Virus record (IMG/VR): IMGVR_UViG_3300045125_000168 | Location: 172,431 to 236,430 of that record | DNA length: 64,000 bases | Direction: 5' to 3' (one strand) | Shown here: piece by piece, positions 3,166 through 46,604 of the stretch | Layout: each line of letters starts with the position of its first letter | Position numbering within the stretch: the first letter of the stretch is position 1 | Program-made: the position numbers and the translations under genes | Notes under the pieces: model-generated | Told to the model about the DNA's origin: nothing | Seen by the model: the letters and a program-made list of their open reading frames with translations, nothing else | Databases searched by the model: none

Positions 3166-3647
3166 TTAGAGTTCGTTGCGCAGAAGGGATTGAAGCTCGT
3201 GCGTGTGTTCCTGCTCTTTGGCCAGGATGTTTTCTAATTCTATTTTAAGGGGGAGTCTTCGCCAAGCTGCGAAATGATCTTCCCGTATAAGGCAACAGCC
3301 TCTTGCTCAAACTTGAGTTGCAACCGAATCAGGTCTTCAATCTTAGACCCCTTCGGAAGCTCGGGAATGATGTGGCGCTTGACCGTAGGTCGTTCACCCA
3401 TTCCGACGATGTAGCGTTGCAGGAGAGAAATATGCGAGGCTTCTTCTCCGGCATTTTCCTCGAAATCCGCAGCAATCGCTGGGCTACAAAGACCGAGGAG
3501 CGATTCTTTATAGGCGTAGTAAAGATCCCACTGCCTAAATTCGCCCATCAAGGCTTCTTGCAAAAGTCCAAGAACCCCCACGTCCTGAGCCGATAAGAGA
3601 TCGGCAGGAGTAGCGGCTAAGACATATAATTTGCGCAAGAAAGACAT
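3166..3647 (-). CDS. Ferritin-like (bacterioferritin/Dps-type) diiron protein
   Basis: ALMGE...Y, EEASHISLL, LKFEQEAVALY and, after a homopolymer indel near 3245, LENILAKEQEH: paired ExxH helices. Confidence 0.8.
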
Positions 3648-3682
3648 AAGCTCTACCTTTATCAATATAAATCTTGCCCGAC

Positions 3683-3958
3683 TTATTTTTTCAAACTGCT
3701 GAGATACAACCACTTCGCAAGAGCCGTGCGAATCTGTTTTTTGACGACCGCGAACTGCTCGGCGTTCTGAGCTTTTTCCAACTCTGTTTTAACTTTGTTC
3801 TCAATGCGAGATAAGTGACCAGCAAAGTCACTGCGCATTTTGTCTAAATCTTGGTTGACCACTTTCCACGCCTCTTCACCCAAAAACTCTTTGGTCGCGG
3901 GCGATAAGGTCGAACCAAGCGCCTTTTTGCGGTTGACTTTTTTCAAGAATGAAACCAT
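3683..3958 (-). CDS. Small helical hypothetical protein
   Basis: MVSFLKKVNRKKALG..., an open frame between the ferritin-like gene and rmlC. Confidence 0.55.
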   Translation of the reverse strand: MVSFLKKVNRKKALGSTLSPATKEFLGEEAWKVVNQDLDKMRSDFAGHLSRIENKVKTELEKAQNAEQFAVVKKQIRTALAKWLYLSSLKK

Positions 3959-3987
3959 ACGGTGCCCCCTTCGCAAATCGATCAAAG

Positions 3988-4515
3988 CTAAATCTTGATG
4001 AGAGGCCAACTCTGATCGCGGGGATTGACTAAGAGAGGAGTCTCAGGCCATTCGATACCAAGCGCAGGGTCATCCCACCGGAGACCGTCTTCGGCACTTT
4101 TTTCATAAGGGTAATCGACTTTGTACTGAACGATCGCCGTTTCAGACAGAACTAGAAAGCCGTGGGCCAAACCTTTGGGGACATAAAGACTCCAGTGGTT
4201 GTCCTCATTAAGATGAAACCCAGCCCATTTCAGATAGCTCGGGGAGTCAGGTCGAAGGTCCACAATCACGTCATAGATGGAACCCGCAACACACCGCACG
4301 AGTTTCGCCTGAGCCGATCCACCTTTTTGAAAGTGCAAGCCTCGCAAGGTGCCTTTCATGCTTTTGGACTGATTGTCTTGAATCCATCTCTCGTGGATGC
4401 CTGCGGAGCGGAAGTCTGACAGATTGTACGGGACCAAAAAATGTCCTCGGTCATCCGAAAAAACATCAGGCTTAAAGATGCAGGCTTGATAGACAGAAGT
4501 TGTCAACTTTTCCAC
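3988..4515 (-). CDS. rmlC: dTDP-4-dehydrorhamnose 3,5-epimerase
   Basis: DDRGHF, QDNQSKS..GTLRGLHFQ, QAKLVRCVAGSIYDVIVDLRPDSP, VPKGLAHGF, YKVDYPY, WDDPALGIEWP. Confidence 0.95.
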   Translation of the reverse strand: MEKLTTSVYQACIFKPDVFSDDRGHFLVPYNLSDFRSAGIHERWIQDNQSKSMKGTLRGLHFQKGGSAQAKLVRCVAGSIYDVIVDLRPDSPSYLKWAGFHLNEDNHWSLYVPKGLAHGFLVLSETAIVQYKVDYPYEKSAEDGLRWDDPALGIEWPETPLLVNPRDQSWPLIKI

Positions 4516-5396
4516 AAGCGACCCTTTTCTTGGAGTTCCTCTAAGTGTTCGACTAACCTAATCTTCCAATCGACGATATGCTGCGGAGCTAGGGCTTGTG
4601 CCTTGGTGGTGTCCAGGGCCGAGAAGGTCGGACGCAAGGCGCGGGCGCGGTGCTCATCACTACTTAAAAACGGCTTGACTTTCAGATCGATATTCACCAC
4701 GGCACTGAGATAGGACGCAATCACCTGAGCCTGATCGCAGCGCGAGGGCACCGTCGTCGCAGAACCCGAAACATGGATTAGACCCCGAAGCCGAGCGTCA
4801 CTGAGCGCCTGGACAATAAAGCCTGCGACATCCTGAGCGTGAGTTGGAAAGCCAAATTGATCGGATACCACGGGTATAGAGTTTGAGTTCTTTAAATTGC
4901 GGACAATCGCTTCCGGGAACGACGCCCGTGCTCGACCGTACACCCAACTGGTGCGCACCAAAAGAAAAGGTTTTAAACAGTGCCTGAGAAATAGCTCTTC
5001 CCCGAGTAATTTGGTCAGACCATAGACCTGAATCGGCCCCGCTTGGTCGTCCTCACGGTAAGGGATGTGGTGCTCTTTGCCACCAAAGATATAGTCCGTC
5101 GAGATATGCACCACGAGCTTACAGGCTTGAAGCTCCGAACAGACCTTGGCTACCCGTTCGGCAAGAGCCGCGTTGAGTAGGAAGGCTTGGTGCAAATGCT
5201 GCTCGGCCTGATCGACGTTGGTGTAGGCCGCAGCATTGATGACCACTTCAGGGTTCACCGACCGCAGATAGAACTCCAGGGCCTCTAGGTTCGAGAGGTC
5301 ACACTCCTGTCTCGTGGGGGCTAAGACAGGGTAGCCGTGCAAAAGTCGCCTAAGCTCCGTGCCGATCAGCCCTGAGCCACCCAGAATCACGATCAT
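4503..5396 (-). CDS. rmlD: dTDP-4-dehydrorhamnose reductase
   Basis: ILGGSGLIG, VINAAAYTNVDQAE, HISTDYIFGG, YGLTKLLGE (YxxxK), VRTSWVYG, DQFGFPT, RPTFSALD. Confidence 0.95.
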   Translation of the reverse strand: MIVILGGSGLIGTELRRLLHGYPVLAPTRQECDLSNLEALEFYLRSVNPEVVINAAAYTNVDQAEQHLHQAFLLNAALAERVAKVCSELQACKLVVHISTDYIFGGKEHHIPYREDDQAGPIQVYGLTKLLGEELFLRHCLKPFLLVRTSWVYGRARASFPEAIVRNLKNSNSIPVVSDQFGFPTHAQDVAGFIVQALSDARLRGLIHVSGSATTVPSRCDQAQVIASYLSAVVNIDLKVKPFLSSDEHRARALRPTFSALDTTKAQALAPQHIVDWKIRLVEHLEELQEKGRLWKS

Positions 5397-5417
5397 GTCG
5401 AACCTCGCTTGGATTGC

Positions 5418-5456
5418 TTGACAAACATCTTAGCTTGCTTTTAATTTGTAGACAAA
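5418..5456. promoter_or_regulatory. Overlapping divergent sigma70-like promoters between rmlD and NUDIX
   Basis: Plus strand TTGACA-17-TTAATT; minus strand TTGTCT-17-TAAGAT; located in the gap between divergent genes. Confidence 0.55.
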
Positions 5457-5550
5457 TCGCTAAAGCTACTTTGTGTACGGTAAAAAGGTGTTCTCATGGA
5501 GGGCACCTTTTTTGTCCCAAAAGATTCAACACGACCTAGAGGAGTCTTTC

Positions 5551-6041
5551 ATGCAGACCTTCCTGAAACGTGTTGCTGATAGATATAGTGTCGTGGCTGA
5601 GATTGGCTCGGGCAAACACGCCCTGACAACCGACGAGAGCGGGAAGTTTTGGGGGAACGCAGGTGCAGGGGGAGTGTTTTGGGCTAAGGAGACGGGCCGT
5701 ATCCTTCTAGCGTACCGCAGCGCCTTGGTGAATGAGCCGCACACTTGGGGTGTGTGGGGTGGGGCCGTGGACAAGGGCGAATCGCCAGAAGATACCGTGA
5801 GACGAGAAATCAAAGAAGAGACCAAGTACGCTGGGGCCTATCAACTCAAGCCGCTCTACGTCTACCAAAACGGCAACTTTCGTTATCACAATTTTCTTAT
5901 TACCGTGCCAAAAGAGTTTGACCCGATCCTCTGCTGGGAAACCGAAGACTTTGGATGGTTTGACTTAGGGGCTTTCCTAAGCCGCTGCACTTCGGTCTCA
6001 AAGCTCTTTTGCCGCACTTAGAAAAAGAAATCAAAAGGTGA
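5551..6041 (+). CDS. NUDIX hydrolase
   Basis: Nudix box GGAVDKGESPEDTVRREIKEET; the last ~20 codons need a frameshift (FPKPLHFGLKALLPHLEKEIKR*). Confidence 0.9.
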
Positions 6042-6046
6042 CCCCT

Positions 6047-6637
6047 ATGTTGTACAGCTTCCTTGAACAGGTATCGGCAAAGTACGCCGTGATTGCTGAA
6101 CCCACCCTGACCCTGTGGCATGGTGGTAACCTGGAGTTTTCCTCGGAAAGCATCTCACATCGGGGTGGTAGATGGGAGCACGGTCCTGGCCTTTATCTCA
6201 CCACGCACTATGATACAGCAAAAAAATATGCCAAAGGGTCTCGCAAGCTCTATCAAGTTGTCGTTCGGGAGGGAAAAGATCTTTCCGACGTGAACTTACC
6301 GATCGATGCTGTTCATGCTTTTATAGATGAGTATTTTATTCGAGCGCGTAAGCGAGACTTGTTAGCGCGAATCGAAAAGCATGTGGTGAATAACAAAATC
6401 AACGCCGAGACTTTTTTGAATATTACGATCAATGAAAATGGCATCAGAAACACGGATACCGATCGGTTGAGAAATTTTTTAGTCCAGCAAGGAGCCGACT
6501 ATCTGGTTGTGGATAACCCTTTTGGTTGGGGCGAAAGAATGCTTGTGCTTTTCAACATGAAAAACATGGTTAGTAAGAAAAGAATAACGCCAAAAGACAC
6601 TATTGAAGTGTTTGATCTGCCGAAAGAGTTTGCCTAA
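6047..6637 (+). CDS. ADP-ribosyltransferase-fold protein (H-Y clade-like)
   Basis: LWHGG...HGPGLYLTTHYDTAKKYA...LYQV matches the HG / G.G.Y.T / A..YA signature of ART-fold phage proteins. Confidence 0.65.
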   Translation: MLYSFLEQVSAKYAVIAEPTLTLWHGGNLEFSSESISHRGGRWEHGPGLYLTTHYDTAKKYAKGSRKLYQVVVREGKDLSDVNLPIDAVHAFIDEYFIRARKRDLLARIEKHVVNNKINAETFLNITINENGIRNTDTDRLRNFLVQQGADYLVVDNPFGWGERMLVLFNMKNMVSKKRITPKDTIEVFDLPKEFA

Positions 6638-13657: not shown

Positions 13658-15622
13658 TTAGGCGACTTTGATATACGTTACACGGATCACGTCACCAGAA
13701 GCTAGTTCTTCTGGTTGCCCAAGTGCAACGCTACCTGCGAAAGTCAAGCGGGTGATTCCACCGACCAAGGACACGGAATAGTCAGACCCTGCGTGCAAGG
13801 CAAGACGATCTACGAAGGCACAGATGCTAAACTCGTGTGCTTCAAAGGCGAGGTCGATATAGCCTTGCGAGACTTCGGTTGAGGTGAGAGTAAAAACTTC
13901 TTTTTGGTAGTTGTCTGCTAAGTAAGACTTGACTGCGCTGACGCTTGGAGCTTGATCCGTTTCCAGACCGCTCATCGAGTCTACTACGGCAGCGTCTCTA
14001 GCTCTCTCGACCGTAAAATATTCGTTAGAGCCTTCAGCGATATCGCTGGTCGTGAGGATGACTGTTCCTGTGTAGCCGTTGACCGAATCAACCATATCCC
14101 CGTCGTTTAGGATCTGATAAGCCGAGCCATCCCAAATGTAGGATTTGCGGTTACCCTCGTAGTTATCATCGTCAAGGACGATTACCACGTCACCAATTTG
14201 GACCTGATTATCTTCGGTGCCGATAGTCAAGGCATCGCGAGCCGCGATATCAGCAACCACGATGACATCCGTGATCGAGATCGCGGGCAGTTGGTTGGAG
14301 GGAATCAGACCATTGGCGTCGAGGGTGGCAACACCGTTAGCAGCGGCCTTCTCGGATAAGCGGATACGTGCGTCTACACCATCAGCCAACTCATCCAAAG
14401 CGGTTTTAGCAGAAATCAAGGCACCGCTGTACAGCGCAGGTGTTTTTGGGATGTACTGTGCATCGGCCACGGTCGCACCGAGTTTGAGGCGCGTGCCGTT
14501 CAGGGTGTCGGAGCTTTCGGAACGAATGACGTTAGAAAGAATGTAGCCGCAGGAACCGGATTTGTTAAAGGCCGCGTAAGCAGCGCCCGTCCAAAAGGTT
14601 ACATCCGCCAACAAAAGAGCACCGCTGCTTGCGGTCGAGACGAGGCCCGCTACGTTTTCAAAACCGCAGGCAGACAAACTAACCGTTCCACCTGAATGAG
14701 TGATGGAGTGGATACGGGAGCAGTTCACGGCTCTAAAGATACCAGAAGAGATCGAAGATTGGCCGAAGCAGTAAACGTCGTTTAAAACGACTGCGGCACT
14801 GCCTACAGGCGAGCCTTCCATCACGATACCGTTGTTGCTACCGTTGCGAAAGTCATGCCAACGCTGATAAGAGCCTTGGAATTTGATCTTTCCGACAAAC
14901 ACGCAGTTATCGAAGTAGTGACGACCAGCCGATCCGTCGATGGTCATACAGACGTTGGCAGATCCACCAACGGCTTCGATAAAGATGTTGCGCATCTTAA
15001 CGCGGGTGGTCAAAGCACCGGAGATAGTGATCGAACCCACGATCTTGATTGGGATCGCATCGGTGCTGCCAACTTCGGTCATAAGAGTGATTTTGCCACC
15101 CTCTGCCGTGAGAGCACTTTTGCCGTTGGCAAGACGAGTCGCATTTGGATCAAACGTCAAGTTGACCGGGGTCGCGTTGTTGCCGTATTGCGGGGAATCC
15201 GATTGCTTGATGATAACCACAAAGTCGGAATTGGCGTTACCATACATATCCGACAAATAAGCGGCATCAATACCAGCCTGAATCGTTTTATAAGGACGAT
15301 ACAAGGAACCATCAGACGCACCGTGAAGTGTGTCGTCGTAATTTTGATCGACATAGACCACGCGAGTCATGGTCGAGAGGTCGATCAGGTTGGTGATCTC
15401 GTCGTCCACGTATTTTTTACGAGTTAGATCATCATCAGAAGACGGTGTGAATGCGGCTTTTGGAAGGATTTGAAAATCCAAACTGTCTGCCGAAGACAAC
15501 TTAAAAAGGCTAAGATCGCTCCCCTCCGAGTCTTTAGCTACAAGGCTTTGCTCATTGAGCAGGCGGATTTTATCGCCATCAATTGCCTCGTTAAGAACAA
15601 ACTTCTTTTTTAACTGAGTCAT
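13658..15622 (-). CDS. Fibre/spike-like virion protein with a probable beta-helix core
   Basis: VYVD...DGSLYRPYKTIQAGID, repetitive beta-rich core, and fibre modules NGVATLDANGLIPSNQLP and VDSVNGYTGTVILTTSDIAEGSNEYFT. Confidence 0.7.
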   Translation of the reverse strand: MTQLKKKFVLNEAIDGDKIRLLNEQSLVAKDSEGSDLSLFKLSSADSLDFQILPKAAFTPSSDDDLTRKKYVDDEITNLIDLSTMTRVVYVDQNYDDTLHGASDGSLYRPYKTIQAGIDAAYLSDMYGNANSDFVVIIKQSDSPQYGNNATPVNLTFDPNATRLANGKSALTAEGGKITLMTEVGSTDAIPIKIVGSITISGALTTRVKMRNIFIEAVGGSANVCMTIDGSAGRHYFDNCVFVGKIKFQGSYQRWHDFRNGSNNGIVMEGSPVGSAAVVLNDVYCFGQSSISSGIFRAVNCSRIHSITHSGGTVSLSACGFENVAGLVSTASSGALLLADVTFWTGAAYAAFNKSGSCGYILSNVIRSESSDTLNGTRLKLGATVADAQYIPKTPALYSGALISAKTALDELADGVDARIRLSEKAAANGVATLDANGLIPSNQLPAISITDVIVVADIAARDALTIGTEDNQVQIGDVVIVLDDDNYEGNRKSYIWDGSAYQILNDGDMVDSVNGYTGTVILTTSDIAEGSNEYFTVERARDAAVVDSMSGLETDQAPSVSAVKSYLADNYQKEVFTLTSTEVSQGYIDLAFEAHEFSICAFVDRLALHAGSDYSVSLVGGITRLTFAGSVALGQPEELASGDVIRVTYIKVA

Positions 15623-15648
15623 GGTTAAAGCTCCTTTGTCTGGGTTTT

Positions 15649-16113
15649 TTAGCTTCCGTAAATAACGCGAAGAGTGTCACCAGTTTCAAGTAGAGCATCC
15701 ATACCCAAAGTGTCCCAAGATAATTCACGGCCTGTAACGATAAAATCAGTGTCTGGAAATTGTGCTATACCACCAAGAATATCAACAGCAAGCAGGTCTT
15801 TGTTCGGTGTTTCTTTGAGCACAATTTTTTTATTATCAATTTGGTCTTGTGTGAGTGTGATATATTCTATGCGTGGGGAAGAGAGTCGCCAAACAGGATC
15901 TTTGTATCCGATATTAGGTTCTATTAGTTCAAGGATGCCAGACCGTAGCGCATCTCCGAGCGCACCTTCGGTATAGTACATCGATTTGTGCAGTTGCTCA
16001 TAGGTCCATATCGTTTCAAGATCGATCGACTCATTGGCTGCAAAAGGCTGCGAGATATAAGAATCCTGAAGCAAAAAGTCGAAAGCAGTTGTGTTCCTTA
16101 CTGTAAAAGCCAT
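15649..16113 (-). CDS. Probable structural protein sharing its C-terminal domain with the adjacent fibre-like protein
   Basis: EYITLT..IDNKKIVL...DFIV...L.TGDTLRVIY resembles EVFTLT..VSQGYIDL...DYSV...LASGDVIRVTY. Confidence 0.6.
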   Translation of the reverse strand: MAFTVRNTTAFDFLLQDSYISQPFAANESIDLETIWTYEQLHKSMYYTEGALGDALRSGILELIEPNIGYKDPVWRLSSPRIEYITLTQDQIDNKKIVLKETPNKDLLAVDILGGIAQFPDTDFIVTGRELSWDTLGMDALLETGDTLRVIYGS

Positions 16114-16135
16114 AAGAAACCTTCAATGGTAAAGT

Positions 16136-16162
16136 GGGGGTTTGTTCGCCAAACCCCCTTTA
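16136..16162. terminator. Hairpin downstream of the actin-like gene
   Basis: GGGGGTTTG-TTCGC-CAAACCCCC with T/A runs on both sides. Confidence 0.6.
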
Positions 16163-16199
16163 GACGCGCAATATAATCTTAATGAGAGGACTCTGTTTC

Positions 16200-17215
16200 T
16201 CATGAGGACAAGCAGTAGGTCAGAAGACCTCTAGCGACTGCCCCAAAAGGATCTTTGGCCATTCTTATTTCAGTGACCTTGAAGGGGAGGGGAGTTTTCT
16301 TTTTGAAACGATTGAGTTCTTCTTCCCAAAGGTCGCGGAAACCTTTGAGGCTTGCTGTTCCCCCGGAGAGAATGATCGGAATGGCGTCTGGAAAATCTAG
16401 TTGAGATTTCATCTTGGCCCACTGGGTCACAAGATGTTTGATCTCATAGCGGATCATTTCTTTGTAGTGGAAGAAAAGGGCTGGACCCATCTCGTCATCA
16501 AGCGCATCTGGTTTCATGAGATCAAACTCAGGGTTTTCTTTGAGCTTGAGAATCCGAGCGATGGACGTTCCCACAGAAGCCGCACTATGTTGGTCAATCC
16601 AGTCACCAGACCGAGCTACCGAGAACTCAATCGAAGCGATCAACTTATAGCTTGCCGCCACGTTGACCTGTCCTGCTCCGTGAGAGATAGCAATCCCGCA
16701 GTGGTCTTCGTTCGCGCACTCCGCGTAGACAATGGCCAAGGCTTCGTTCACAGGCTCGGGAACGTAACCCAGGTCTTCGAGGAGGTTGCTAAAAAACCCA
16801 GTGTGCCAGACGTTGTTGGCCTTAGGGTTATCAAGTGGCACTGCTGGGATGGAGAACGCACATTTTTCTTCCCCAAACTCACGGGGTTCACCCAGGAGAG
16901 TTTTTACGAGAGTCGAGATGATGGCTCTACCGTCTTTTCTTCAGGGTTCAGAACCCCAGAAGCCATGGGACGTCGGACTTCTTTGTTCAAGACGCGGGCG
17001 ATGCTGATGGCTTCGTCACCGACGATGTATGCTTTGTTATTGAGCATCACCGCATTAAGAGAACCAGCCGCGAGGCGAGACCTTTGCTCTTCGTCGATTT
17101 CCACAAAAGCGTTGCGAAGTCTTTTCACTTCGACCTCGTTTTTGCCTTCAACGCGAGCAACTAACAGGTTTGATGTTCCCACATCCAAACCAGCACCGAG
17201 GGTGACTTTTGACAT
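16200..17215 (-). CDS. Actin-superfamily ATPase, volactin-like; one frameshift near 16900
   Basis: Phosphate-1 GLDVGTSNL, connect-1 PVNEALA, phosphate-2 GIAISHGAGQVNV, adenosine IILSGGTA, C-terminal DPFGAVARGL. The join reads LNPEEK-DGRAIISTLVKTLLGEP...FSIPAVPLD. Confidence 0.85.
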
Positions 17216-17226
17216 GATCTTAACTC

Positions 17227-17535
17227 CTACGAGCTTTTGCGTTTCCGTTTCAGTTTCTCAACGTCTTCTGAATCATGAGCTTCGAGACTCGTCTTGACCT
17301 TCTTAAGCGAAGCCTCTCCTAACCGAGCTTTCGGAATAAACAGAGGGGCTTCTTCGGAGATTCCCACGTCTACCACATTCGGTTCGACCGCTACGGGCGT
17401 GGAGTACACTGCCGTAGGAGCTTGACCTTGTTTGTGGACATGAGCAGATAATATATCAATTTTTTTCTCTAAAGTCTGGACGTGTTCTAGCAGCTTGTCA
17501 ATCGGGGTCTCTCGGATAAAAAACTTTTTAGCCAT
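17227..17535 (-). CDS. Small protein upstream of the actin-like gene (coiled coil, linker, basic tail)
   Basis: LLEHVQTLEKKIDIL...PLFIPK...KLKRKRKSS. Confidence 0.55.
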   Translation of the reverse strand: MAKKFFIRETPIDKLLEHVQTLEKKIDILSAHVHKQGQAPTAVYSTPVAVEPNVVDVGISEEAPLFIPKARLGEASLKKVKTSLEAHDSEDVEKLKRKRKSS

Positions 17536-17568
17536 GGCGAGTACCTTTCTTATAAGGTTGAACATAGG

Positions 17569-17940
17569 TTAGTCGTTTTTCAAAAAACTGTAGCGGCTTT
17601 GGCACTGATTACATACGGCAACCACACGATATCCAGCAGGCACTAATTTGATATCATCCGACAGGCAATTTTCATTGCGGCAGCGTTCTTTGTGAGTAGG
17701 AGGCGTTTGTTTTTCTTGTATGGTAGTCTCGTTCCCCTGAAAAGCCAATGCCTCTTCGTCCTCATACAGGTCTCTTAAATCCTCCTCTCGCCTTTTTGCG
17801 TGATGTGCTTCTTTCCTTAAGCGACCTATTTTTCGATTTTGAGCTTTTAGCTGTTGTAACTCCCTTTGCATTTTTTTTAGTTTTTCTTCCAGCTCGTTGA
17901 TACGCCTTTTTGCTAGTCGCGTCTCGGCTGTAGCCCCCAT
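17569..17940 (-). CDS. Coiled-coil protein with a C-terminal zinc ribbon
   Basis: Heptad-rich N-terminus; CRNENC...CNQC. Confidence 0.6.
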   Translation of the reverse strand: MGATAETRLAKRRINELEEKLKKMQRELQQLKAQNRKIGRLRKEAHHAKRREEDLRDLYEDEEALAFQGNETTIQEKQTPPTHKERCRNENCLSDDIKLVPAGYRVVAVCNQCQSRYSFLKND

Positions 17941-18000
17941 CGGTATTTCACCTCATTTGCTTTTCGGGGTTGTAGAAAAACCTATGGAGTAACCCAAAGA

Positions 18001-19209
18001 TCAGTCTAACAGGCCGTAAAACAAAAGAAGCTGTTGAATATTCGAGCCGATTGGACCACGGCCTTTCTCGGCAAGAAACACGTTATTGGTGCGAAAGCGA
18101 TACGGTCGAGTCGCAATAGCTCCAGCAGTTTGACTGGCTCTTTGCAGGGATTGTTTCGCTTTGCCGACGTTACTATCCAGAAACTCTTTAAAACCACTCA
18201 AAATACTTTCAATATCGGCACCAGGGTTGTAATCGAGCGTCACGGATTGGCCAGAAAAATTGAGGTTGGTCTCCGCATAAAGAATACGCTGGGAAGACAA
18301 GGCCCACCATGCGGAACCTAGAACGATATAGCTTTCAATCGCGGCAGGAAAGCTCGCGGGCGTAAAGTTACTGGGAGGCCAATAGCTATTGACGATATTC
18401 GCGCCCTGCGTCACGGCCTCTAAAATATCTTCATTGGTGTAGGCGTAGACGAGTCCGAGTTTCTTTTGCAGCTTATCGATCAGCATTCGGACACTATTGA
18501 TAAGGTGCATGGTGGTCGTGCCGATCACATGGACCGACTGATGCTCAAACTCAAGCGGACTCGTGGCAGACTCCCGCATGGTCCAAAGGGCTGAGTAAAT
18601 GCCAATCTTGAGAGGGGGAGTGTCGGTGTAATAGATCAAACCCGTCCCGCTCTCAACCTCAGCGATCTTGTCCACGGTAAGGGGGTCGGGCACAGGAAAG
18701 GTGAGGGAGGCGGAGTGCATCAGGGTGTCCGTCCCCTTCATCGATAGGCCGAGAGAAAGCTGGTCTGGTCTTACAAGGTTTTTAAAGAAAAGCCGCACAG
18801 GTTGATTGGCAAAAGTCATCACTTTTTGTAATTCGGGCTCTTGCGCAGGCACTCGGTCTTCCACTACATCAAAGTGGAAGGATGCTTCAAACTGCCTGCC
18901 CTGCTCATCGACCATCATAGCTTGAAGGGCGTATCGTCGGGTCGGGCTGGTGAGTTCGATATTTTTGGGAACCACCCAACCGCACTTCCAAGCTCCAGGC
19001 TGAGGTCCAGCTACAGCGACCCCCTGAGCTACGATGGAACCGGAAGGGCTGAGAATCCGGTAGTTCGGGTAGACTTGAGGGTCACTAGGGGTGACGGGCT
19101 GAGTTTTATTGGTGTCGTAATAAAAATTAAAGAAAAAATATTCTAACCTTCCCCGTGTCAAGACACGAGAGGTCTCTTGGCTTATGGCTTGATACCCTGG
19201 AGCTTGCAT
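18001..19209 (-). CDS. Putative head-tail adaptor/neck protein
   Basis: C-terminal VRMLIDK...NSYWPPSNF...FP...IVLGS...L...NFSGQSVTLDY resembles large-myovirus adaptor proteins; N-terminus is Ig-like. Confidence 0.5.
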   Translation of the reverse strand: MQAPGYQAISQETSRVLTRGRLEYFFFNFYYDTNKTQPVTPSDPQVYPNYRILSPSGSIVAQGVAVAGPQPGAWKCGWVVPKNIELTSPTRRYALQAMMVDEQGRQFEASFHFDVVEDRVPAQEPELQKVMTFANQPVRLFFKNLVRPDQLSLGLSMKGTDTLMHSASLTFPVPDPLTVDKIAEVESGTGLIYYTDTPPLKIGIYSALWTMRESATSPLEFEHQSVHVIGTTTMHLINSVRMLIDKLQKKLGLVYAYTNEDILEAVTQGANIVNSYWPPSNFTPASFPAAIESYIVLGSAWWALSSQRILYAETNLNFSGQSVTLDYNPGADIESILSGFKEFLDSNVGKAKQSLQRASQTAGAIATRPYRFRTNNVFLAEKGRGPIGSNIQQLLLFYGLLD

Positions 19210-19223
19210 AACGACCTCGTTTT

Positions 19224-19529
19224 TTAACGTCGCCTTGACATTCGGTCTTCGTGTATTCTAAGCATAGTTTTAAGAGTTTTGTTCATGTAAGCACGGACCT
19301 GGGATGTCGGACCTAACGAGAAGATAAGTAACCAGTTGGGCGGTCTATAAAAGTAGGAGCGTCGTCGGTAGATCTCCTGCATGATGCGACCTTGCCGCCA
19401 CAATTTAAATAAATTCATATAAAGAGGGTTCCTCGCCTCCTTATAAATCTCAGGCTCGATGAGAGAGTAGTCGGGAATCATCTCTTTGATTTTGACAAAA
19501 TGTTTTAAATCGTCTCCCGAACTACTCAT
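19224..19529 (-). CDS. Hypothetical protein
   Basis: 101-aa ORF in a co-directional run. Confidence 0.45.
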   Translation of the reverse strand: MSSSGDDLKHFVKIKEMIPDYSLIEPEIYKEARNPLYMNLFKLWRQGRIMQEIYRRRSYFYRPPNWLLIFSLGPTSQVRAYMNKTLKTMLRIHEDRMSRRR

Positions 19530-19920: not shown

Positions 19921-20567
19921 TTAAATAAACTGATACGGCATCATTTTTTTGAAGACTAGATCATTCTGAAAGTTCAGACCCTGTGTCTTAGCTTGGACAA
20001 CAGAGAAATCCTGAAACAGATTTAGGTCTGTTGTACCGTTCTTATAGATACAAATGGACGCGGACACGTCGTCCTGAGAGTTTGAAAAGCCAAGACCGAC
20101 TAAGTGGCAAAGCTCAAAGGGGATGATGGCAGGAACTTTTTGGAGTCGATCGCGGCATGATGCGATAGCCACTGGCTTCCTGCAAGGCCCTCACCCTGGA
20201 ACTGCATTTGAAAAAGACAGTTGCTGACAGGGTTATGCGAGACAGAAAAAAGGCTTTTCAGCCAATCGCCTTTGGGTGACGAGTTGTCGAGGCAAATGAC
20301 CTCCAGCCTCTCGTCCGTTTCCAGCCGCCCCATTTGATTGCCAACAAAATCACGGACGATCACAGGCTTCATGCTGCTATTGGTGATGATATAGATCCAT
20401 CCTGTCTTGAGCGTGAGGGCGCTTGGAAGCGCCACCACTTGCCCACTGCTTGAGCCTTTGAGAATCAAATGTACAGGAGAAAGCACCGTCAACTGATGCT
20501 TTGCTTGTCCAGTGGTAAGTACCTGAGAAGAAAGTTTCAGGCGGTCACCCTCAAGCAAAGTCGTCAT
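19921..20567 (-). CDS. Probable virion structural protein; two fragments
   Basis: GQVVALPSALTLKTGWIYIITNSS module resembles DQVLRLPDATKLQPGVRY at 30.7 kb. Confidence 0.5.
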
Positions 20568-24939: not shown

Positions 24940-25310
24940 GAATGATACCCCTTTTAATTTCCCCAGTTAGGTATTAGTCCCCGAGATAATCTTAATAACC
25001 ATTTAAAATTTCTTTTAGGTCAAAGGTACGCCAGTGAATAACCAATAAGCTAAGAGAGGAACCGATCCCCTTTTGAGGGCTTGTGCTAAATCTTGGTGCT
25101 CTACTAAAAGTCGAAAATCGACATCTAAAAGTTCCTCAAGAATCAGCACAGGCGGGGGCTTTAGTTGATAACAGTTCCAGGAGCAATAACCATAGCCGTG
25201 CGGTAAGGCACCGCCTTTGGGGTAAAAAACTCTGGTTGGTCCTCATCGTCCATCGCGCCACAGACAGCGCACTGACGAAAGGGAACAGGTTTCAAAACTC
25301 CCTTGGAACC

Positions 25311-32113: not shown

Positions 32114-32199
32114 AAAAGACCGCAAAAATCAGCAACTCCTAAGTCGCTTTTAGAACTGCGCTTCTAAAAACATTTACATTTTTTTTGGAGTTAAAACGC

Positions 32200-34427
32200 A
32201 TGAGTAAGAACGTCTTAAAACACAACGTACCCCTCCGCTTTGGCACCGCTTCCTCTGACCCAGCCCAGACAGAAAACGGCGTTATCTACTATAACACAAC
32301 AGACAACCTTTTCAAGGTTTATGAAAACTCCCAATGGGTGAAGCTCGCAAGCCGCACCTATGTTGACTCCGTGGCCGCAGGTTTCGACCCGAAAGAAAGC
32401 GTCGTCGCTTCTTCGACCGCTAACCTCGCAAGCCTTGCTTCCATCGGGTCCTCTTTGGACGGCGTTTCGCTTTCCAACGGTGACCGCGTTCTTTTGAAAG
32501 ACCAGTCCACTGCGTCTCAAAACGGTATCTACGTTTACACCAGTGGTTCCTTGGCTCGTTCTGTTGACTTCAACGATAGCACGGAAGTCAACGGTGGTGA
32601 GTATGTGTTCGTGAAGGGCGGTTCTCTTTGGGGTGCAACCGCTTGGGTTGTGACCAACGCTCCTGCCACCATCGGTGTTAGCGACATCGTTTTCACGCAG
32701 GTTGCTGGTGCAGGCAAGTCCTTGAACAGCGCCTACCTCACGGGCAACAGCATCTCCACTAGCGGTGGCAACAACGTCATCATCGCTGGTACGGAGAAAC
32801 TGCAAGTCACGGCAAGCAGCGGCGTGTCCATCACCAACGCTCTTACCGCAGGCGCTACGGTTTTGACCAGTGCTTCCGTTACCGGAGCTTTGAGCGTTGG
32901 CGCTGGTAAGTTGATCGTTGATAGCAACGGTAACCTCACCAAGATCAACAACGTCTCCTATAGCTTCCCTGCAACGCAAGCCTCTGGTTCCAACTACGTT
33001 CTCCGTAACGATGGCTCGGGCAACCTCACCTGGAACAGCCTGCGTCTCGATAACATGAACGACCTGCTCTTGACCAGCTTGTCTGATAAGCAAATCCTCC
33101 GTTATGACTCGGCTTCCTCTAAGTGGAAGAATGAGTCTGCTATTTCCTCGACCTCTGGCTCTGCTTCTGCGTCCAAAATCATCATGACCAACTCTAGCGG
33201 TCTGTTGGACACCTCCTTCCTGCAATACAACGTCAACCTCGGCAACAACATTCTTTCTGGTGTCGCAACCCCAGTGGCTTCTACTGACGGTGCGAACAAG
33301 GCTTACGTTGACGCCTTGACCCTCAACACTGTTTACGGTCAAGACCCCGATGGTAGCGGTGCAACCATCACCACCAACTCGACCGATGGTGACGTGATTA
33401 TCGCTGGTACGCAAAAGCTGCAAGTCACGGCTTCTGGCGGTTTGGACGTGACCAACTCCATGACCGTTGGTAGCAGCGCCTCGATCGCTCAGTCCTTGAG
33501 CGTGGCGGGTGCTAAATTTGTGGTTAGCTCCACGGGGACCTGACCAAGATCAACAACGTCTCCTACTCTTTCCCGTCCGCTCAAGCAAGCGGTGCTAACT
33601 ACGCTCTCGTGAACAACGGCAGCGGAACCTTGACCTGGAACACCTTGTCCCTGTCTGGGTTGAGCGACGTCGCCCTTGCAAGCCTTGCTGATAAGCAAAT
33701 CCTGCGTTATAGCTCCACTGCTGGTAAGTGGGTGAACGAAAGCCCGATCGGTTCTACCACTGGTATCGCCGATGCGAGCAAGATCATCATGACGGATGCC
33801 TCTGGCAAACTTGATAGCTCGTTCCTGCAATACAATGTCAACTTCGGTGGTAACATCCTTTCTGGTGTTGCAACCCCAGTTGCCTCTAACGATGCCGTCA
33901 ACAAAGCCTACCTTGATTCCATCGTGGCTAACGCTGTTGCTGGTGTAACTCTGCAAACCGTGTACGAGCAAGACACCAACGGTGGTGACGTTCTCATCAC
34001 CACGAACTCTGTGGACGGAAGCCTTGTCATCGCTGGTTCCGAAGCCCTGAAAGTTTCGGCTGCTGGTGGTTTCAAACTGGCTGATAGCTCCGACGCAACC
34101 AAGTTCGTCCAGTCTATCTACAAAGATAGCTTGGCTCTTTCCGTTGGCTCTAGCGTTCTTTCCGCTCTCACCTACCCTGCTGCATCCATCGGCGGGATGA
34201 TGGTTGAGTACCGTGTGAAAGAAGCTGCTTCGGGTCGCGTTCGCGTTGGTACACTCCTCGTAACCAGCACCAGTGCTGATGTCTCCGTTTCCGATACCTT
34301 CGTTGAAACTGCTGATTGCCGACTGTCGTGGTCCGGTGCCATCAACGCTGGAAACGTGGAATTGTCCTACACCAAGACATCTGACTCCGCAAGCATGAGC
34401 GTCGAAGTTAAGAAGTTCATGGCCTAA
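32200..34427 (+). CDS. Fibre-like virion protein, paralog 1 (no variable insert, internal duplication)
   Basis: LKHNVPLRFG..ENGVIYY..FKVYEN, DGV.L..GDRVLLKDQ..QNGIY, EVNGGEYVFVK; one indel near 33540; strong codon bias. Confidence 0.8.
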
Positions 34428-34438
34428 TTTTTGATTTA

Positions 34439-34474
34439 GATAGCATAAGGGTTTCGGCCCTTATGCTATCTTTC
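34439..34474 (+). terminator. Intrinsic terminator-like hairpin after paralog 1
   Basis: GATAGCATAAGGG-TTTCGG-CCCTTATGCTATC followed by TTT. Confidence 0.75.
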
Positions 34475-34535
34475 CGCCCCTCTTTTGCTCCTAGACCTCT
34501 TTATTAAAACAATAATCCCCTTAAGGAGTATAAAA

Positions 34536-37350
34536 GTGAGTGACATAAAACTTATTAAGCACGGTGTACCCGTGCGGTTCGGGAAGGCAGGCGAAGCCCC
34601 TCCTCTCCCGAAAATGGGATGATATACTACGACACCTCTGAAGAACTTTTCAAAGTTTATGAAAATAGTGGATGGCAGATCCTTTCCTCCCGCGACTATG
34701 CGGATTCCCGTGTTGCTGGTTTTGACATCAAAGAAAGCTGCGCAGCAGCGACGGTCGAAGGACTTACAGCCACCTATGCTAATGGCACCTCTGGCGTTGG
34801 CGCGACCCTCACGGGTGCTGGGGCGCTTCCCTCCATCGATGGTGTCAGCCTTGCTCTCAATGCTAGGGTTTTGGTCCGTGCGCAAGGTGATGCGGCTCAA
34901 AACGGTGTCTATAAAGTTACGGCTTTGAGCCCTTTTGTTCTCACTAGAGCCGTAGATTTTGATGATTCTACTGAAGTGAACGGTGGTGAGGTCGTTTTCA
35001 TCAAAGAAGGAACGACCTTCGGAAACTGTTCTTTTGTGTGCCTCAGTTCCTCCGTTACCTTCGGCACCACTGCCATCAGCTTCACGCAGATCAGTGGTAC
35101 CGCAAGAACCTTGCAACAATATTACGCCACAGGGAACCAGATCACGACTGGTGACTCCCGTGACGTTATCATCGAAGGCTCCGAAAAACTTGAAATCACT
35201 GCCTCTAACGGTATGGAGATTTCTGGTTCGTTGTCCGCAGGTGAGACGCTGCTTTCTAGCGCAAGCGTCACCAATGCTATGGACGCAGCCGCAGCAAAGT
35301 TCTCCATCAGCAATGCTGGTAACATCAAAAAGTTGAATAATGTTTCGGTCAGCTTCCCAACATCTGCTTCCCAAGAAAACTTTGCGCTCGTCAATGACGG
35401 TTCTGGCACACTCTCTTTCGGTAACCTAGCTGTTAGCAATCTGAATGATGTCGGCCTAGCTAGTCTAAGCAGTGGTGAATTTCTTGAATACGATGCTGCA
35501 ACTAATTCCTGGGTCAATGACAATCCTGCTACCACCGCTTCCGGCTCTACATCGGTTGACTATTTACGATTGCCACCTGGCATGAGTGAAGATCCCGCAA
35601 TTTATAATGGTTACGCATTCGGTCTGATAGGTGATGGCTTACTAGGAGGACAGCAGATTGGTGGTGTATCTGGTCCACTAACGCAAGCATTTTTTTTGGT
35701 TCAAACACCATACAACGCAAGTCCATTACCTACGGGAACTATCCAAGTTGAGCTTTATGCAACGTCCAGCCAAAATGGACAGCTATTACCCACAGGGTCT
35801 CCTCTTGCTGTTTCTAACACTTATGATGTGTCCCAAATTGTGCCTGGGTACGTGCGAAATGAAGCCTCTTTTACTTTTTCATCTCCCGCACTATTGTCTA
35901 GTGAAAACGTCTATGCATTGATGATTCGCAGTAACAACGTGGCACAGGAAAGTTGGCAAAGCCCTGGCGTTTTGCAAGATCATAACGACTTTTTATACAC
36001 GCCATACTTAGCTATTCAATACGATGGTATGAGTATGAGTCTAGTTACTATGCAAAGTAGGAACCTTTTTTTCAAGATTGTTTTGGGTGGCACTGTTTCT
36101 GACAGTCTTGTCACAACAGACACAAATGGAAAAATTGATAGTAGTTTTCTGCAATTTAGTGGCCTGAGTTTGGGTGGTCACGTCATCTCTGGCATTGCAA
36201 GCCCAAGCGTTTCGACTGACCTTGCGAACAAGGCTTATGTTGATAGCGTGAGCTTGCAGGCTCTTTATAATCAGGACACCGATGGTCTTGGTGCCATCAT
36301 CACGACCGATGCTTCGGACGGTGATCTTATCATCGAAGGAAGTGAGAAATTGCATATTACCGCTGATAGCGGTCTTGACCTCGCTCAGATCCTTTCGGTC
36401 TCCGGTTCCATGGTTGCTGGAAGCCTTGTTGCCGGAAACGGCAGCATGAGCGTCTCTGCTTCGGGAGACCTTGGGAAGATCAAGGGCGTGTCTTATGTCT
36501 TTCCCGCCAGTCAAGCCACGGGTAGCAACTATACCCTGGTGAATGACGGTTCTGGGAACCTTAGCTGGGGTCAGCTAAAAGTTTCCGAAATGAACGACGC
36601 CCTTGTTTCCACGGCTTCCAACCAAGAGATCATTCAATGGAATGGCTCTAACTGGGTGAACGTCAGCGCCGTGACCTCTGGTAGTTCTAGCCGTATGTTC
36701 ATGACAACACCGAACGGTCGTCTCGACACGGTGGCATTGCAGCATAATCTCGATTTCGGGGTAAATGTTTTATCTAACATTCTTGCCCCAGTTGCCAGTA
36801 CCGATGCTGTTCCTAAATATGTTGCTGACGATAAAGCTGCGGACTCTTCTTCCGGTACGGGTTCGGTCACTCTACAATTATCTTACGGTCAAGATGTAGA
36901 TGGTAGTGATGTTCTTATCACAACTAACTCCGTAGATGGAATCCTTGAAATTGCAGGTTCTGAGGCTTTCCTCGTCAGTGCTGGAAAAGGATTCTTGCTC
37001 GCCGATAACGCCGATGCTTCTAAGTTTTCTAAGGTGATTTACAAGCATGAACTCGCCCTTTCGGCAAATCAAAGCAACGTCGCTTTAGCCGATGTGACTT
37101 TCGATTCCACAGTTCATCAGGGATGTTTGATCGAATATCGTATCAAAGATGATACCTCGGGTGCCTCTCGTATCGGTCTTCTTCTTGTTTCGACAGATGG
37201 AACGAACACGACGATCTCCGATTCCTTTGCAGAAACGTCTCCTCTTGGTGTTTCCTGGTCTGTTGGCCTTGCAGATGGAGATGTCGAGGTTCGTTATACA
37301 ACGAACTCTACCTCCAAAAGATGTCTGCAAAAATAAAATATTTTGCTTAG
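34536..37350 (+). CDS. Fibre-like virion protein, paralog 2
   Basis: GTG start after AAGGAG; same N- and C-terminal modules as paralog 1; unique insert about 35520-36100; indels near both ends. Confidence 0.8.
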
Positions 37351-37357
37351 TGTCTGT

Positions 37358-37384
37358 GGGGTTCCCCTCAAGGGGAACCCTTTT
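37358..37384 (+). terminator. Intrinsic terminator after paralog 2
   Basis: GGGTTCCCC-TCAA-GGGGAACCC followed by TTTT. Confidence 0.75.
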
Positions 37385-37388
37385 AAAA

Positions 37389-37459
37389 GAAACTATAGAT
37401 ACCTTTCATACGATCATTTCAGTTAAAAACCCGATGAAAGGATTGCGATATGACCGATA
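37389..37459 (+). promoter_or_regulatory. Conserved 5' leader with a stem covering the RBS (copy 1)
   Basis: CCTTTCAT...ATGAAAGG inverted repeat includes AAAGGA; nearly identical to 40352-40422. Confidence 0.6.
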
Positions 37460-40309: not shown

Positions 40310-40322
40310 AGGTATCTATAAA

Positions 40323-40345
40323 CAGGGGCTTTTTTGAAGCCCCTG
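40323..40345 (+). terminator. Hairpin after paralog 3
   Basis: CAGGGGCTT-TTTTG-AAGCCCCTG. Confidence 0.6.
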
Positions 40346-40351
40346 CACAAA

Positions 40352-40422
40352 GAAACTATTGATACCTTTCATACGATAATTTCAGTTAAAAACCCGATGA
40401 AAGGATTGCGATATGACCGATT
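40352..40422 (+). promoter_or_regulatory. Conserved 5' leader with a stem covering the RBS (copy 2)
   Basis: GATACCTTTCATACGAT..TTTCAGTTAAAAACCCGATGAAAGGATTGCGATATG, as upstream of paralog 3. Confidence 0.6.
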
Positions 40423-43373: not shown

Positions 43374-43393
43374 AGGGATTGATGGCTACTATT

Positions 43394-43441
43394 GGATACC
43401 TTTCATATTACACTAAAATGCTGAAAGGATTTGCATATATG
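43394..43441 (+). promoter_or_regulatory. Diverged copy of the RBS-covering leader
   Basis: GATACCTTTCA-tattacactaaaatgc-TGAAAGGAT: the stem is kept while the loop differs. Confidence 0.55.
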
Positions 43442-46400: not shown

Positions 46401-46604
46401 ACAATTCTCTGGGCGACTCTCGTGTGGGAACCTTGATGCTTTCTACCGATGGTACAAGCACCTCGATTTCTGAGCACGTTTGCTGAGACCGCACCGATGG
46501 GCGTGACCTGGGCCGCAACGATGGCTGAAAATGACGTCCAGGTGCTCTATACGACCAACTCGTCGTCCAAAATCCTGAGTGCTAAAATCAAGCTTTTTGC
46601 CTAA
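43439..46604 (+). CDS. Fibre-like virion protein, paralog 5 (two variable inserts); many fragments
   Basis: MASKKLLKHGVPVRFG...; inserts about 43670-44130 and 44820-45370; ends LSAKIKLFA*. Confidence 0.75.

What the first reader, a model, noticed from the sequence alone, without database searches (positions are those of the whole stretch)
16200..17215. Phage-encoded volactin-like actin homolog
All actin-fold motifs are present. The spacing and wording (GLDVGT; RNAFVEI; YIVGDEA...NKEVRRPM..GVL; EALAIVYAE...GIAISHGAGQVNV; FSVARSGDWID; SGGTA; AVARGLL) match my recollection of the haloarchaeal volactin family much better than MreB, ParM or FtsA. Established: some jumbo phages use tubulin (PhuZ) spindles. 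An actin of this clade embedded among virion genes suggests an alternative phage cytoskeleton for positioning DNA or capsids, or for altering host shape.
Basis: partly seen in the sequence, partly recalled or inferred. Interest (0 to 1): 0.78.

Follow-up and report, generated by a model that had tools for sequence, protein, structure and literature searches.

The report
Jumbo-phage volactin-family actin gene
A giant bacteriophage carries a gene for an actin-like protein of the family first described in salt-loving archaea. The gene looks broken here, but the break is most likely a sequencing error. Intact copies are common in other huge phages, where they may build filaments during infection.

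Summary
On the minus strand, 16200-17215 encodes one actin-fold protein split by a single missing base at 16934-16938. Both pieces match Pfam PF25216 (Volactin) end to end. No MreB, ParM/Alp or FtsA model reaches its threshold. The window is 100% identical to a 236 kb IMG/VR viral contig, and the gene sits among connector- and tail-fibre-like genes.

About 70 relatives at 59-91% identity are single intact proteins of 317-357 aa. Several lie on 100-275 kb phage-like contigs. The window copy keeps all 38 family-invariant residues.

The window holds 13-14 frame breaks in about 24 kb of comparable sequence. The actin break is therefore most likely an assembly indel, not gene death.

A model of the 91%-identical intact relative (pLDDT 94) is closest to filament-forming actins: MamK, BeeR, F-actin and MreB. 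Haloarchaeal proteins that score as core family members are 34% identical, but they form a separate clade. The phage protein is a family member, not an ortholog.

Some family members are fused to ParB-HTH or HU DNA-binding domains, and some carry inteins. The best reading is an ATP-dependent filament former that positions phage DNA or assembly sites. This function is inferred, not shown. I found no paper describing it.

The parts
16907..17215 (-). N-terminal piece of the actin-like gene. Residues 1-94 are in the true frame, followed by 9 out-of-frame codons and a stop at 16904-16906. An AGGAG ribosome-binding site lies 7-11 nt upstream of the ATG.
   Evidence: ORF list and translation. PF25216 profile positions 3-93, E 3.6e-16. 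Alignment with intact relatives.
16203..16940 (-). C-terminal piece of the actin-like gene. The true reading starts at the Asp codon 16934-16932. The stop codon is at 16200-16202.
   Evidence: Translation. PF25216 profile positions 91-318 of 321, E 6e-39. 91% identical to P0001.
16930..16942 (-). Frame-break site. The minus strand reads GAAGAAAAGACGG. The Lys codon AAG (16936-16934) of the N frame and the Asp codon GAC (16934-16932) of the C frame share one base. One base is missing relative to intact relatives, in or next to the A4 run at 16935-16938.
   Evidence: Codon-level comparison with L001, L002 and L003. Three-frame view.
17227..17565 (-). 112-aa ORF directly upstream. Its stop codon overlaps the actin gene's ribosome-binding site. 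It is conserved next to the actin gene in L001. Function unknown.
   Evidence: No Pfam or PHROG hit.
17569..17940 (-). 123-aa ORF with a basic coiled-coil N-terminus and a C-terminal Cys4 motif. It is conserved upstream of the actin gene in the window, L001, L002 and L003.
   Evidence: Only weak hits: phrog_1244 (E 5e-4) and FlaC_arch (below threshold).
18001..19209 (-). 402-aa head-tail connector-like virion protein. It is syntenic with the actin gene in the four closest loci.
   Evidence: phrog_17327, E 9.4e-15. tblastn hit to the phage PaBG head-tail connector. Synteny.
16136..16158 (.). GC-rich hairpin (9-bp stem GGGGGTTTG / CAAACCCCC) between the actin stop codon and the next gene. Possible terminator or processing site.
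   Evidence: Read directly from the sequence. The terminator scan did not flag it.
15649..16113 (-). 154-aa ORF downstream. Its domain is also found in a paralog at 20100-20567 and in a giant (2120 aa) protein of L001.
   Evidence: Neighbour clustering.
13658..15622 (-). 654-aa tail-fibre or minor-tail-like protein.
   Evidence: PHROG tail families, best E 2.9e-9.

Best explanation
This is the gene for a Volactin-family (Pfam PF25216) actin-fold ATPase of an uncultured jumbo phage with a bacterial-type gene layout. The copy in the window looks split. The split is most likely a one-base assembly or sequencing indel in an indel-rich contig, so the phage probably makes a normal protein of about 338 aa. 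By inference, the protein binds ATP through the conserved phosphate-1, phosphate-2 and adenosine motifs and polymerises into dynamic filaments inside the infected cell. These filaments would position phage DNA or virion-assembly sites, as an actin-type counterpart of the PhuZ tubulin spindle.

Shown: the sequence, family membership, fold, phage context, and conservation in many huge-phage contigs.

Inferred: that the indel is an artefact, that the protein polymerises, and what the filaments carry.
For: Family and fold:
- PF25216 matches both pieces contiguously. The intact 91% relative P0001 scores 206 bits against a cut-off of 35, with no other family at E<=0.1.
- tblastn against plasmids hits only haloarchaeal replicons: 34% identity, 96-97% coverage, E 7e-54 to 3e-58. 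Those proteins score 437-466 bits on PF25216.
- The AlphaFold model of P0001 has pLDDT 94.1 and pTM 0.91.
- Its best solved neighbours are all filament formers. Z-scores: MamK filament 28.0, BeeR filament 26.6, F-actin 25.0, MreB 25.0.
- Volactin forms dynamically unstable filaments in vivo (PMC10869688).

Phage context:
- The window is 100% identical over 21 kb to IMGVR_UViG_3300045125_000168, a 236 kb contig.
- Connector-, tail-fibre- and exonuclease-type PHROG hits lie around the gene.

Conservation:
- 237 hits were found. About 70 of them, at 59-91% identity, are intact proteins of 317-357 aa. Several lie on contigs of 100-275 kb.
- Synteny is conserved in the four closest loci.
- A profile search found 1383 cluster representatives.
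- ESM Atlas clusters of this family are 51-79% viral.

Artefact reading of the break:
- All 38 invariant and 40 of 41 near-invariant family columns are kept. There are only 29 differences from P0001.
- There are 13-14 frame-change junctions in about 24 kb of the window that has comparable sequence.

Link to DNA:
- Some family members are fused to HTH_ParB (P0157, P0182) or to HU.
- Some members carry inteins.
Against: - No reads were available, so a real recent frameshift cannot be excluded.
- The only other copy with the break (L004) is the same assembly, so it is not independent.
- Polymerisation, ATPase activity and cargo are untested.
- No ParR-like adaptor or centromere-like repeat array was found next to the gene.
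- Neighbours are not detectably conserved between the window's clade and the next phage clade.
- The family replaces the usual phosphate-2 Asp with an invariant Ser. Its effect on catalysis is unknown.
Confidence: 0.6

Rival explanations
1. The frameshift is real. This phage genome carries a freshly inactivated actin pseudogene, or makes only a 103-aa stub, possibly with a restarted 213-aa C-terminal fragment.
For: The sequence as given has the break. The identical IMG/VR record has it too.
Against: - That record is the same assembly.
- No second lesion is present, and all invariant residues are kept.
- All listed relatives on contigs long enough to judge are intact.
- 13-14 other frame breaks in conserved or paralogous genes point to a technical cause.
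Confidence: 0.15
2. The break is bridged on purpose. A -1 ribosomal slip on A-AAG, or transcriptional slippage on the A run, would yield exactly ...NPEEK-DGR...
For: A -1 re-pairing of the Lys tRNA from AAG to AAA, followed by GAC GGT, reproduces the conserved peptide with no residue lost. A-AAG is a known slippery motif in bacteria (my own knowledge).
Against: - No relative needs it. L001, L002 and L003 are in frame at this site.
- There is no canonical X-XXY-YYZ heptamer.
- The many other frame breaks in the window make a special mechanism unnecessary.
Confidence: 0.03
3. The protein is intact and polymerises, but it acts on the host. It would remodel cell shape or block division rather than move phage DNA or particles.
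For: The founding member, volactin, affects the rod-to-disk shape change in Haloferax (PMC10869688). The nearest solved folds include MreB.
Against: - Fusions to ParB-HTH and HU in the family point to DNA.
- No MreB-partner-like genes were recognised nearby.
- Nothing here tests this reading directly.
Confidence: 0.15
4. It is a non-polymerising actin-fold ATPase, for example a chaperone-like or kinase-like enzyme used in virion assembly.
For: The gene lies in a structural gene block. The phosphate-2 Asp is replaced by Ser. Hsp70-like proteins appear lower in the fold lists.
Against: - The top structural matches are all filament formers, with Z 24-28 over about 290-310 residues.
- No Hsp70, sugar-kinase or FtsA Pfam model reaches its threshold.
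- The family's characterised member forms filaments.
Confidence: 0.07

Closest known systems
Volactin (VolA, HVO_2015) of Haloferax volcanii and its haloarchaeal homologs; Pfam PF25216
   Same: - Same Pfam family over the full model length.
- Shared signature motifs: GLDxGT, RRP, NEA, SxGxGxxN, GDWID, SGGT, AVARG.
- 34% identity over 96-97% of the length to the Haloarcula, Halogeometricum and Natrinema proteins.
   Different: - Encoded by a phage with a bacterial-type gene layout, not by an archaeal chromosome.
- Sits in a separate, long-stemmed clade.
- Scores 206 bits against 437-466 bits for haloarchaeal members on the family model.
- Lacks the acidic C-terminal tail of the haloarchaeal proteins.
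- Its function is untested.
PhuZ tubulin spindle of nucleus-forming jumbo phages
   Same: A phage-encoded cytoskeletal NTPase in a genome over 200 kb. The proposed role is positioning phage DNA or capsids.
   Different: Tubulin/FtsZ fold and GTP, against actin fold and ATP. There is no homology. No chimallin or PhuZ gene was seen in this 64 kb window. Only part of the genome was examined.
Phage and prophage actin-like proteins: AlpC of Corynebacterium prophage CGP3, and ParM/Alp7A-type plasmid and phage-plasmid segregation actins
   Same: Actin-fold ATPases encoded by mobile elements. They form filaments that act on the element's own DNA (PMC4446434).
   Different: - Different sequence families. 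ALP_N scores E 0.13, below its threshold. A ParM structure appears only at rank 20 in Foldseek.
- No downstream ParR/AlpA-like adaptor or repeat centromere was recognised.
MamK, BeeR and MreB (solved bacterial actin filaments)
   Same: Closest solved folds: Z 28.0, 26.6 and 25.0, with about 285-306 residues aligned.
   Different: Only 17-19% identity. The MreB_Mbl Pfam model does not match at E<=0.1. There is no magnetosome or cell-wall gene context.

Membership tests
Pfam PF25216 Volactin | Score above the curated gathering threshold (35 bits) over the whole model | tested here: met
   The N piece scores 60 bits (profile 3-93) and the C piece 134.8 bits (profile 91-318). The intact 91% relative P0001 scores 206 bits over profile positions 3-320 of 321.
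Pfam PF25216 Volactin | Family-invariant residues, including the nucleotide-binding motifs | tested here: met
   38 of 38 invariant and 40 of 41 near-invariant columns of an 80-sequence alignment are kept in the window copy. The motifs are shared with haloarchaeal members.
Pfam PF25216 Volactin | Direct full-length similarity to haloarchaeal members | tested here: met
   tblastn of P0001 against plasmids hits only Haloarcula, Halogeometricum and Natrinema: 33.6-34.4% identity, 96-97% coverage, E 7e-54 to 3e-58.
Haloarchaeal volactin clade (orthologs of VolA) | Groups inside the haloarchaeal clade in a family tree | tested here: not met
   The haloarchaeal trio forms its own clade (support 100). 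The window and P0001 lie in a separate 11-row clade (support 100, stem length 1.13) next to other phage-contig sequences. This is a quick, unrooted tree, and H. volcanii VolA itself was not available.
Filament-forming actins (functional class) | ATP-dependent polymerisation into filaments | not testable with these tools
   Indirect evidence only. The best solved neighbours are filament subunits, and volactin forms filaments in vivo.
Actin/ASKHA fold | Two RNase-H-like domains with four subdomains, and a confident structural match | tested here: met
   Model pLDDT 94.1. Z 24-28 to MamK, BeeR, actin, MreB and crenactin over 285-315 residues.
MreB/Mbl (PF06723) | Match to the family model above threshold | tested here: not met
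   No MreB_Mbl hit for either piece at E<=1 or for P0001 at E<=0.1.
ParM/Alp segregation systems | ALP_N/ParM model match, plus an adjacent adaptor gene and a repeat centromere | tested here: not met
   ALP_N scores E 0.13, 12.9 bits, against a cut-off of 26.3. No iterated repeats lie in 15600-19300. Neighbours have no DNA-binding domain hits. Adaptors are small and diverse, so failing to recognise one is weak evidence.
FtsA (PF14450) | Match to the family model above threshold | tested here: not met
   No hit for the window pieces or for P0001.

The most novel reading that the evidence does not exclude
A widespread lineage of huge phages builds its own actin cytoskeleton from a divergent volactin-type protein. 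The dynamic filaments would move or anchor phage genomes, replication centres or maturing particles. This would be an actin-based parallel to the PhuZ tubulin spindle, and it would make the Volactin family a cross-domain DNA- or cargo-positioning system.
Probability: 0.35. Interest if true: 0.75.

Novelty: new member of a known kind. Interest (0 to 1): 0.5.

Why it matters
Phage cytoskeletons are so far known mainly from PhuZ tubulin in nucleus-forming jumbo phages, plus a few ParM/Alp-type actins. Here a different actin family turns out to be common and conserved in huge-phage contigs. Its only characterised member is an archaeal cell-shape factor. A profile search found 1383 cluster representatives. 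Some members carry inteins, and some are fused to ParB or HU DNA-binding domains.

In the searchable literature I found no paper that describes the phage members. If they polymerise, they offer a testable second model of how very large phages organise the infected cell. They would also shed light on what volactin-type filaments do in general.

A practical lesson also follows. This contig is full of indels, so its 'broken' genes should not be read as pseudogenes.

Tried and rejected
- A PDB sequence search with the C piece gave no hit at E<=10.
- blastn of the locus against GenBank phages gave no match.
- No PHROG family covers the actin gene.
- The search for related loci with an alignment that included the two window pieces failed for lack of a conserved block. 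I repeated it without them.
- L004 looked like an independent copy with the same frameshift. It is 100% identical to the window over 21 kb, so it is the same assembly.
- DNA of the closest intact relative, P0001, could not be fetched. The exact missing base could therefore not be named.
- I tested whether the frame breaks sit at homopolymers. Ten of the 13 junction windows examined contain a run of 4 or more, but such runs occur 18.5 times per kb, so this is what chance gives. The artefact argument therefore rests on the number of breaks, not on their sequence context.
- A search for centromere-like repeats around the operon found only short two-copy matches.
- The promoter scan found fewer sites than the shuffled controls did (5 against a mean of 7.3). 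The terminator scan found 14 against a mean of 8.6 (sd 3.0), which is not clearly above chance.
- Synteny between the window's clade and the next phage clade was not supported. The proteins of about 400-460 aa upstream in each clade show no BLASTP similarity.
- PHROG scans of neighbours in distant loci were empty.
- The first pdb_via job failed and was repeated.
- H. volcanii VolA itself was not obtainable. Haloarchaeal homologs from megaplasmid records were used in its place.

Full report
**What is there.** The minus strand of 16200-17215 holds two abutting ORFs. One runs 17215->16904 (103 aa) and the other 16841->16200 (213 aa from its first GTG). Translating all three frames shows that the second frame is open from 16940 (246 codons). 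The two frames are both open only in 16907-16942.

Pfam's Volactin model (PF25216) matches the N piece at profile positions 3-93 (E 3.6e-16). It matches the C piece at positions 91-318 of 321 (E 6e-39). The only other matches are below threshold: ALP_N at E 0.13 and an irrelevant PGM domain. So this is one gene interrupted by a single base.

**The break.** Intact relatives read ...RRPMASGVLNPEEK-DGRAIIS.... In the window the minus strand reads GAA GAA AAG ACG GTA. L001, L002 and L003 carry ...GA[AG] AA[AG] GA[AT] GG... in one frame. The Lys codon (16936-16934) and the Asp codon of the downstream frame (16934-16932) share a base. One nucleotide is therefore missing in or beside the A4 run at 16935-16938.

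The IMG/VR locus L004 shows the same break. It is 100% identical to window 6209-27215 over 21,007 bases with no gap, so it is the same assembly and gives no independent support.

**Is the gene dead?** Apart from the indel there is no damage.
- The window copy keeps 38 of 38 invariant and 40 of 41 near-invariant columns of an 80-sequence family alignment.
- It differs from the 91%-identical intact protein P0001 at 29 positions, mostly conservative replacements.
- Every listed relative on a contig long enough to judge is a single protein of 317-357 aa.

The window as a whole is full of frame changes. Comparison with ORFs of syntenic relatives shows two more broken genes, near 25214 and 26193. 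Comparison among the paralogous fibre-like genes at 32-47 kb shows colinear matches that jump frame at about ten more points. Examples are 38100, 33532, 42568, 44322, 44732, 45772 and 46302. An automated count gives 14 junctions in roughly 24 kb of comparable sequence.

At that rate, roughly four in ten 1-kb genes would be hit by chance. The break in the actin gene is therefore best explained as an assembly or sequencing indel.

I could not show a specific homopolymer bias. Runs of 4 or more bases occur 18.5 times per kb, so a run near each junction is expected anyway.

A programmed -1 slip on A-AAG would restore the exact conserved peptide. No relative needs it, so I rate it unlikely. Only reads can settle this.

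**What the element is.**
- The window is identical to IMGVR_UViG_3300045125_000168 (236,430 bp). The window's own protein is recorded on a contig of 351,605 bp.
- Around the gene lie a tail-fibre or minor-tail-like protein (13658-15622) and a head-tail connector-like protein (18001-19209). The latter hits phrog_17327 at E 9.4e-15 and distantly resembles the connector of Pseudomonas jumbo phage PaBG.
- An HNH-repeat exonuclease lies nearby. A large array of fibre or 'head decoration'-like paralogs occupies 32-47 kb.
- The window contains no tRNA genes. GC content is about 47%.
- The gene has an AGGAG ribosome-binding site. It is packed directly behind two small ORFs of 112 and 123 aa.
- In the four closest loci the order is connector-like, then 123 aa, then about 110-130 aa, then the actin gene.

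**Family and relatives.** A search of 5.8 billion proteins gave 237 hits, and the 120 listed all carry PF25216. About 70 are 59-91% identical (the window's clade). A second group is 38-45% identical. Several of these proteins lie on contigs of 100-470 kb.

Among GenBank phages only two records match, both uncultured huge-phage genomes. They are LR745208 (485 kb, 34.5% identity) and LR756511 (595 kb, 28% identity), and both are unannotated. Among species-representative genomes only five metagenome-assembled genomes (MAGs) match, at 32-38%: three Bryobacterales/Bryobacteraceae, one Halanaerobiaceae and one Hyphomicrobiales.

Among 72,556 plasmid records only haloarchaeal replicons match (Haloarcula pNG700, Halogeometricum pHBOR01 and a Natrinema replicon). 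The matches have 34% identity over 96-97% of the protein, with E from 7e-54 to 3e-58. Those archaeal proteins score 437-466 bits on PF25216. P0001 scores 206 bits, and the second phage group and the bacterial MAG proteins score 232-266 bits.

A profile search of 1.84 billion cluster representatives finds 1383 members at E<=1e-3 and 473 at E<=1e-30. The nearest ESM Atlas clusters are all 'Volactin domain' clusters, and the members with a taxonomic record are 51-79% viral.

In a quick maximum-likelihood tree, the window pairs with P0001 (support 100) inside an 11-row clade with a long stem (support 100, length 1.13). That clade sits next to the group containing LR745208. The haloarchaeal proteins form a separate clade. 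The tree is unrooted and lacks VolA itself.

In summary, the protein is a member of the Volactin family but not of the haloarchaeal volactin clade.

**Fold.** AlphaFold2 on P0001 with the 80-sequence alignment gives pLDDT 94.1 and pTM 0.91. Foldseek against the PDB ranks the BeeR filament, the MamK filament, MreB, crenactin, actin/Arp and a ParM first, at 12-18% identity. Re-alignment gives these Z-scores:

| Solved structure | Z |
|---|---|
| MamK filament | 28.0 |
| BeeR filament | 26.6 |
| F-actin | 25.0 |
| MreB | 25.0 |
| Crenactin | 24.8 |

In AlphaFold DB the two best cluster representatives reach TM 0.81 at 22-24% identity. Both are long proteins, named 'FtsA' and 'chromosome segregation ATPase-like'. 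MreB-like entries follow at TM about 0.6.

The family shares the phosphate-1 (GLDxGT), connect-1 (NEA), adenosine (SGGT) and connect-2 (AVARG) motifs. It has an invariant Ser where most actins have the phosphate-2 Asp.

**Function.** Nothing here measures function. Five observations support a filament-forming role that acts on DNA or cargo.
- The characterised member, volactin, forms dynamically unstable filaments in vivo (PMC10869688).
- The closest solved folds are filament subunits.
- Some family members carry N-terminal ParB-HTH domains (P0157, P0182). An Atlas cluster from Acidobacteriota fuses HU to Volactin.
- Many viral members carry inteins (P0123, and an all-viral Atlas cluster). From general knowledge, inteins tend to sit in highly conserved, important genes.
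- The gene is retained across many huge-phage contigs.

Three observations count against a ParMRC-like arrangement specifically.
- There are no repeat arrays near the gene.
- No adaptor was recognised.
- No neighbour conservation is detectable between phage clades.

Host-shape manipulation, or a non-polymerising ATPase role in assembly, remain possible.

**Novelty.** Full-text searches for volactin, PF25216, phage-encoded actin, and actin-like proteins in jumbo or huge phages found no description of phage volactin-family proteins. Phage or prophage actins of other families are known, for example AlpC (PMC4446434). The sequences themselves are already in public databases with automatic Volactin-domain labels. 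I therefore file this as a new member of a known kind. The function is open and testable, and the case is of moderate interest.

Noticed in passing
window 16958, 25214, 26193, 33532, 34606, 38100, 39536, 42568, 43106, 44322, 44732, 45772, 46302, 46475: Fourteen places where colinear homolog or paralog matches jump reading frame. The contig appears indel-rich, so many of its short overlapping ORFs are probably split genes. For example, 37450-38184 plus 38127-39551 looks like one gene.
   Followed up: partly
window 32185-46600 (+): Tandem array of at least six paralogous fibre or 'head decoration'-like genes (phrog_2647, 30390, 27782, 11518). They are 35-77% identical to each other.
   Followed up: partly
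window 3240-6637: Cluster of host-like auxiliary genes. It holds a ferritin-like gene (3240-3713, -), dTDP-4-dehydrorhamnose 3,5-epimerase RmlC (3988-4515, -), the reductase RmlD (4503-5396, -) and a NUDIX gene (5473-6021, +). A weak DUF3990 / ADP-ribosyltransferase-like ORF follows (6038-6637, +).
   Followed up: no
L003:3917-6859: The homolog of the 402-aa connector-like protein is 980 aa here. An insertion of about 570 aa lies between the parts that match window residues 1-326 and about 320-402. It may be an intein or an inserted domain.
   Followed up: no
proteins P0123, P0157, P0182, P0184 (one search hits): Variant architectures in the Volactin family. P0123 has an intein with an HNH endonuclease inside the actin domain. 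P0157 and P0182 have an N-terminal ParB-HTH domain. P0184 has a C-terminal Wzz/GNVR/ParA-like tyrosine-kinase module. The ESM Atlas also lists an HU-Volactin fusion cluster.
   Followed up: partly
window 20100-20567 and 19921-20172 (-): ORFs of 155 aa and 83 aa lie where the 91%-related contig has one 238-aa gene. This is probably another split gene. The 155-aa part is a paralog of the 154-aa ORF just downstream of the actin gene.
   Followed up: partly
L018:3992-5020, L019:4001-5188, L020:4001-5035: Haloarchaeal megaplasmid or secondary-replicon copies of volactin-family genes. They are annotated only as 'hypothetical protein' or 'cell division protein FtsA'. The Halogeometricum copy lies about 3 kb from an archaea-specific SMC-related gene.
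   Followed up: no
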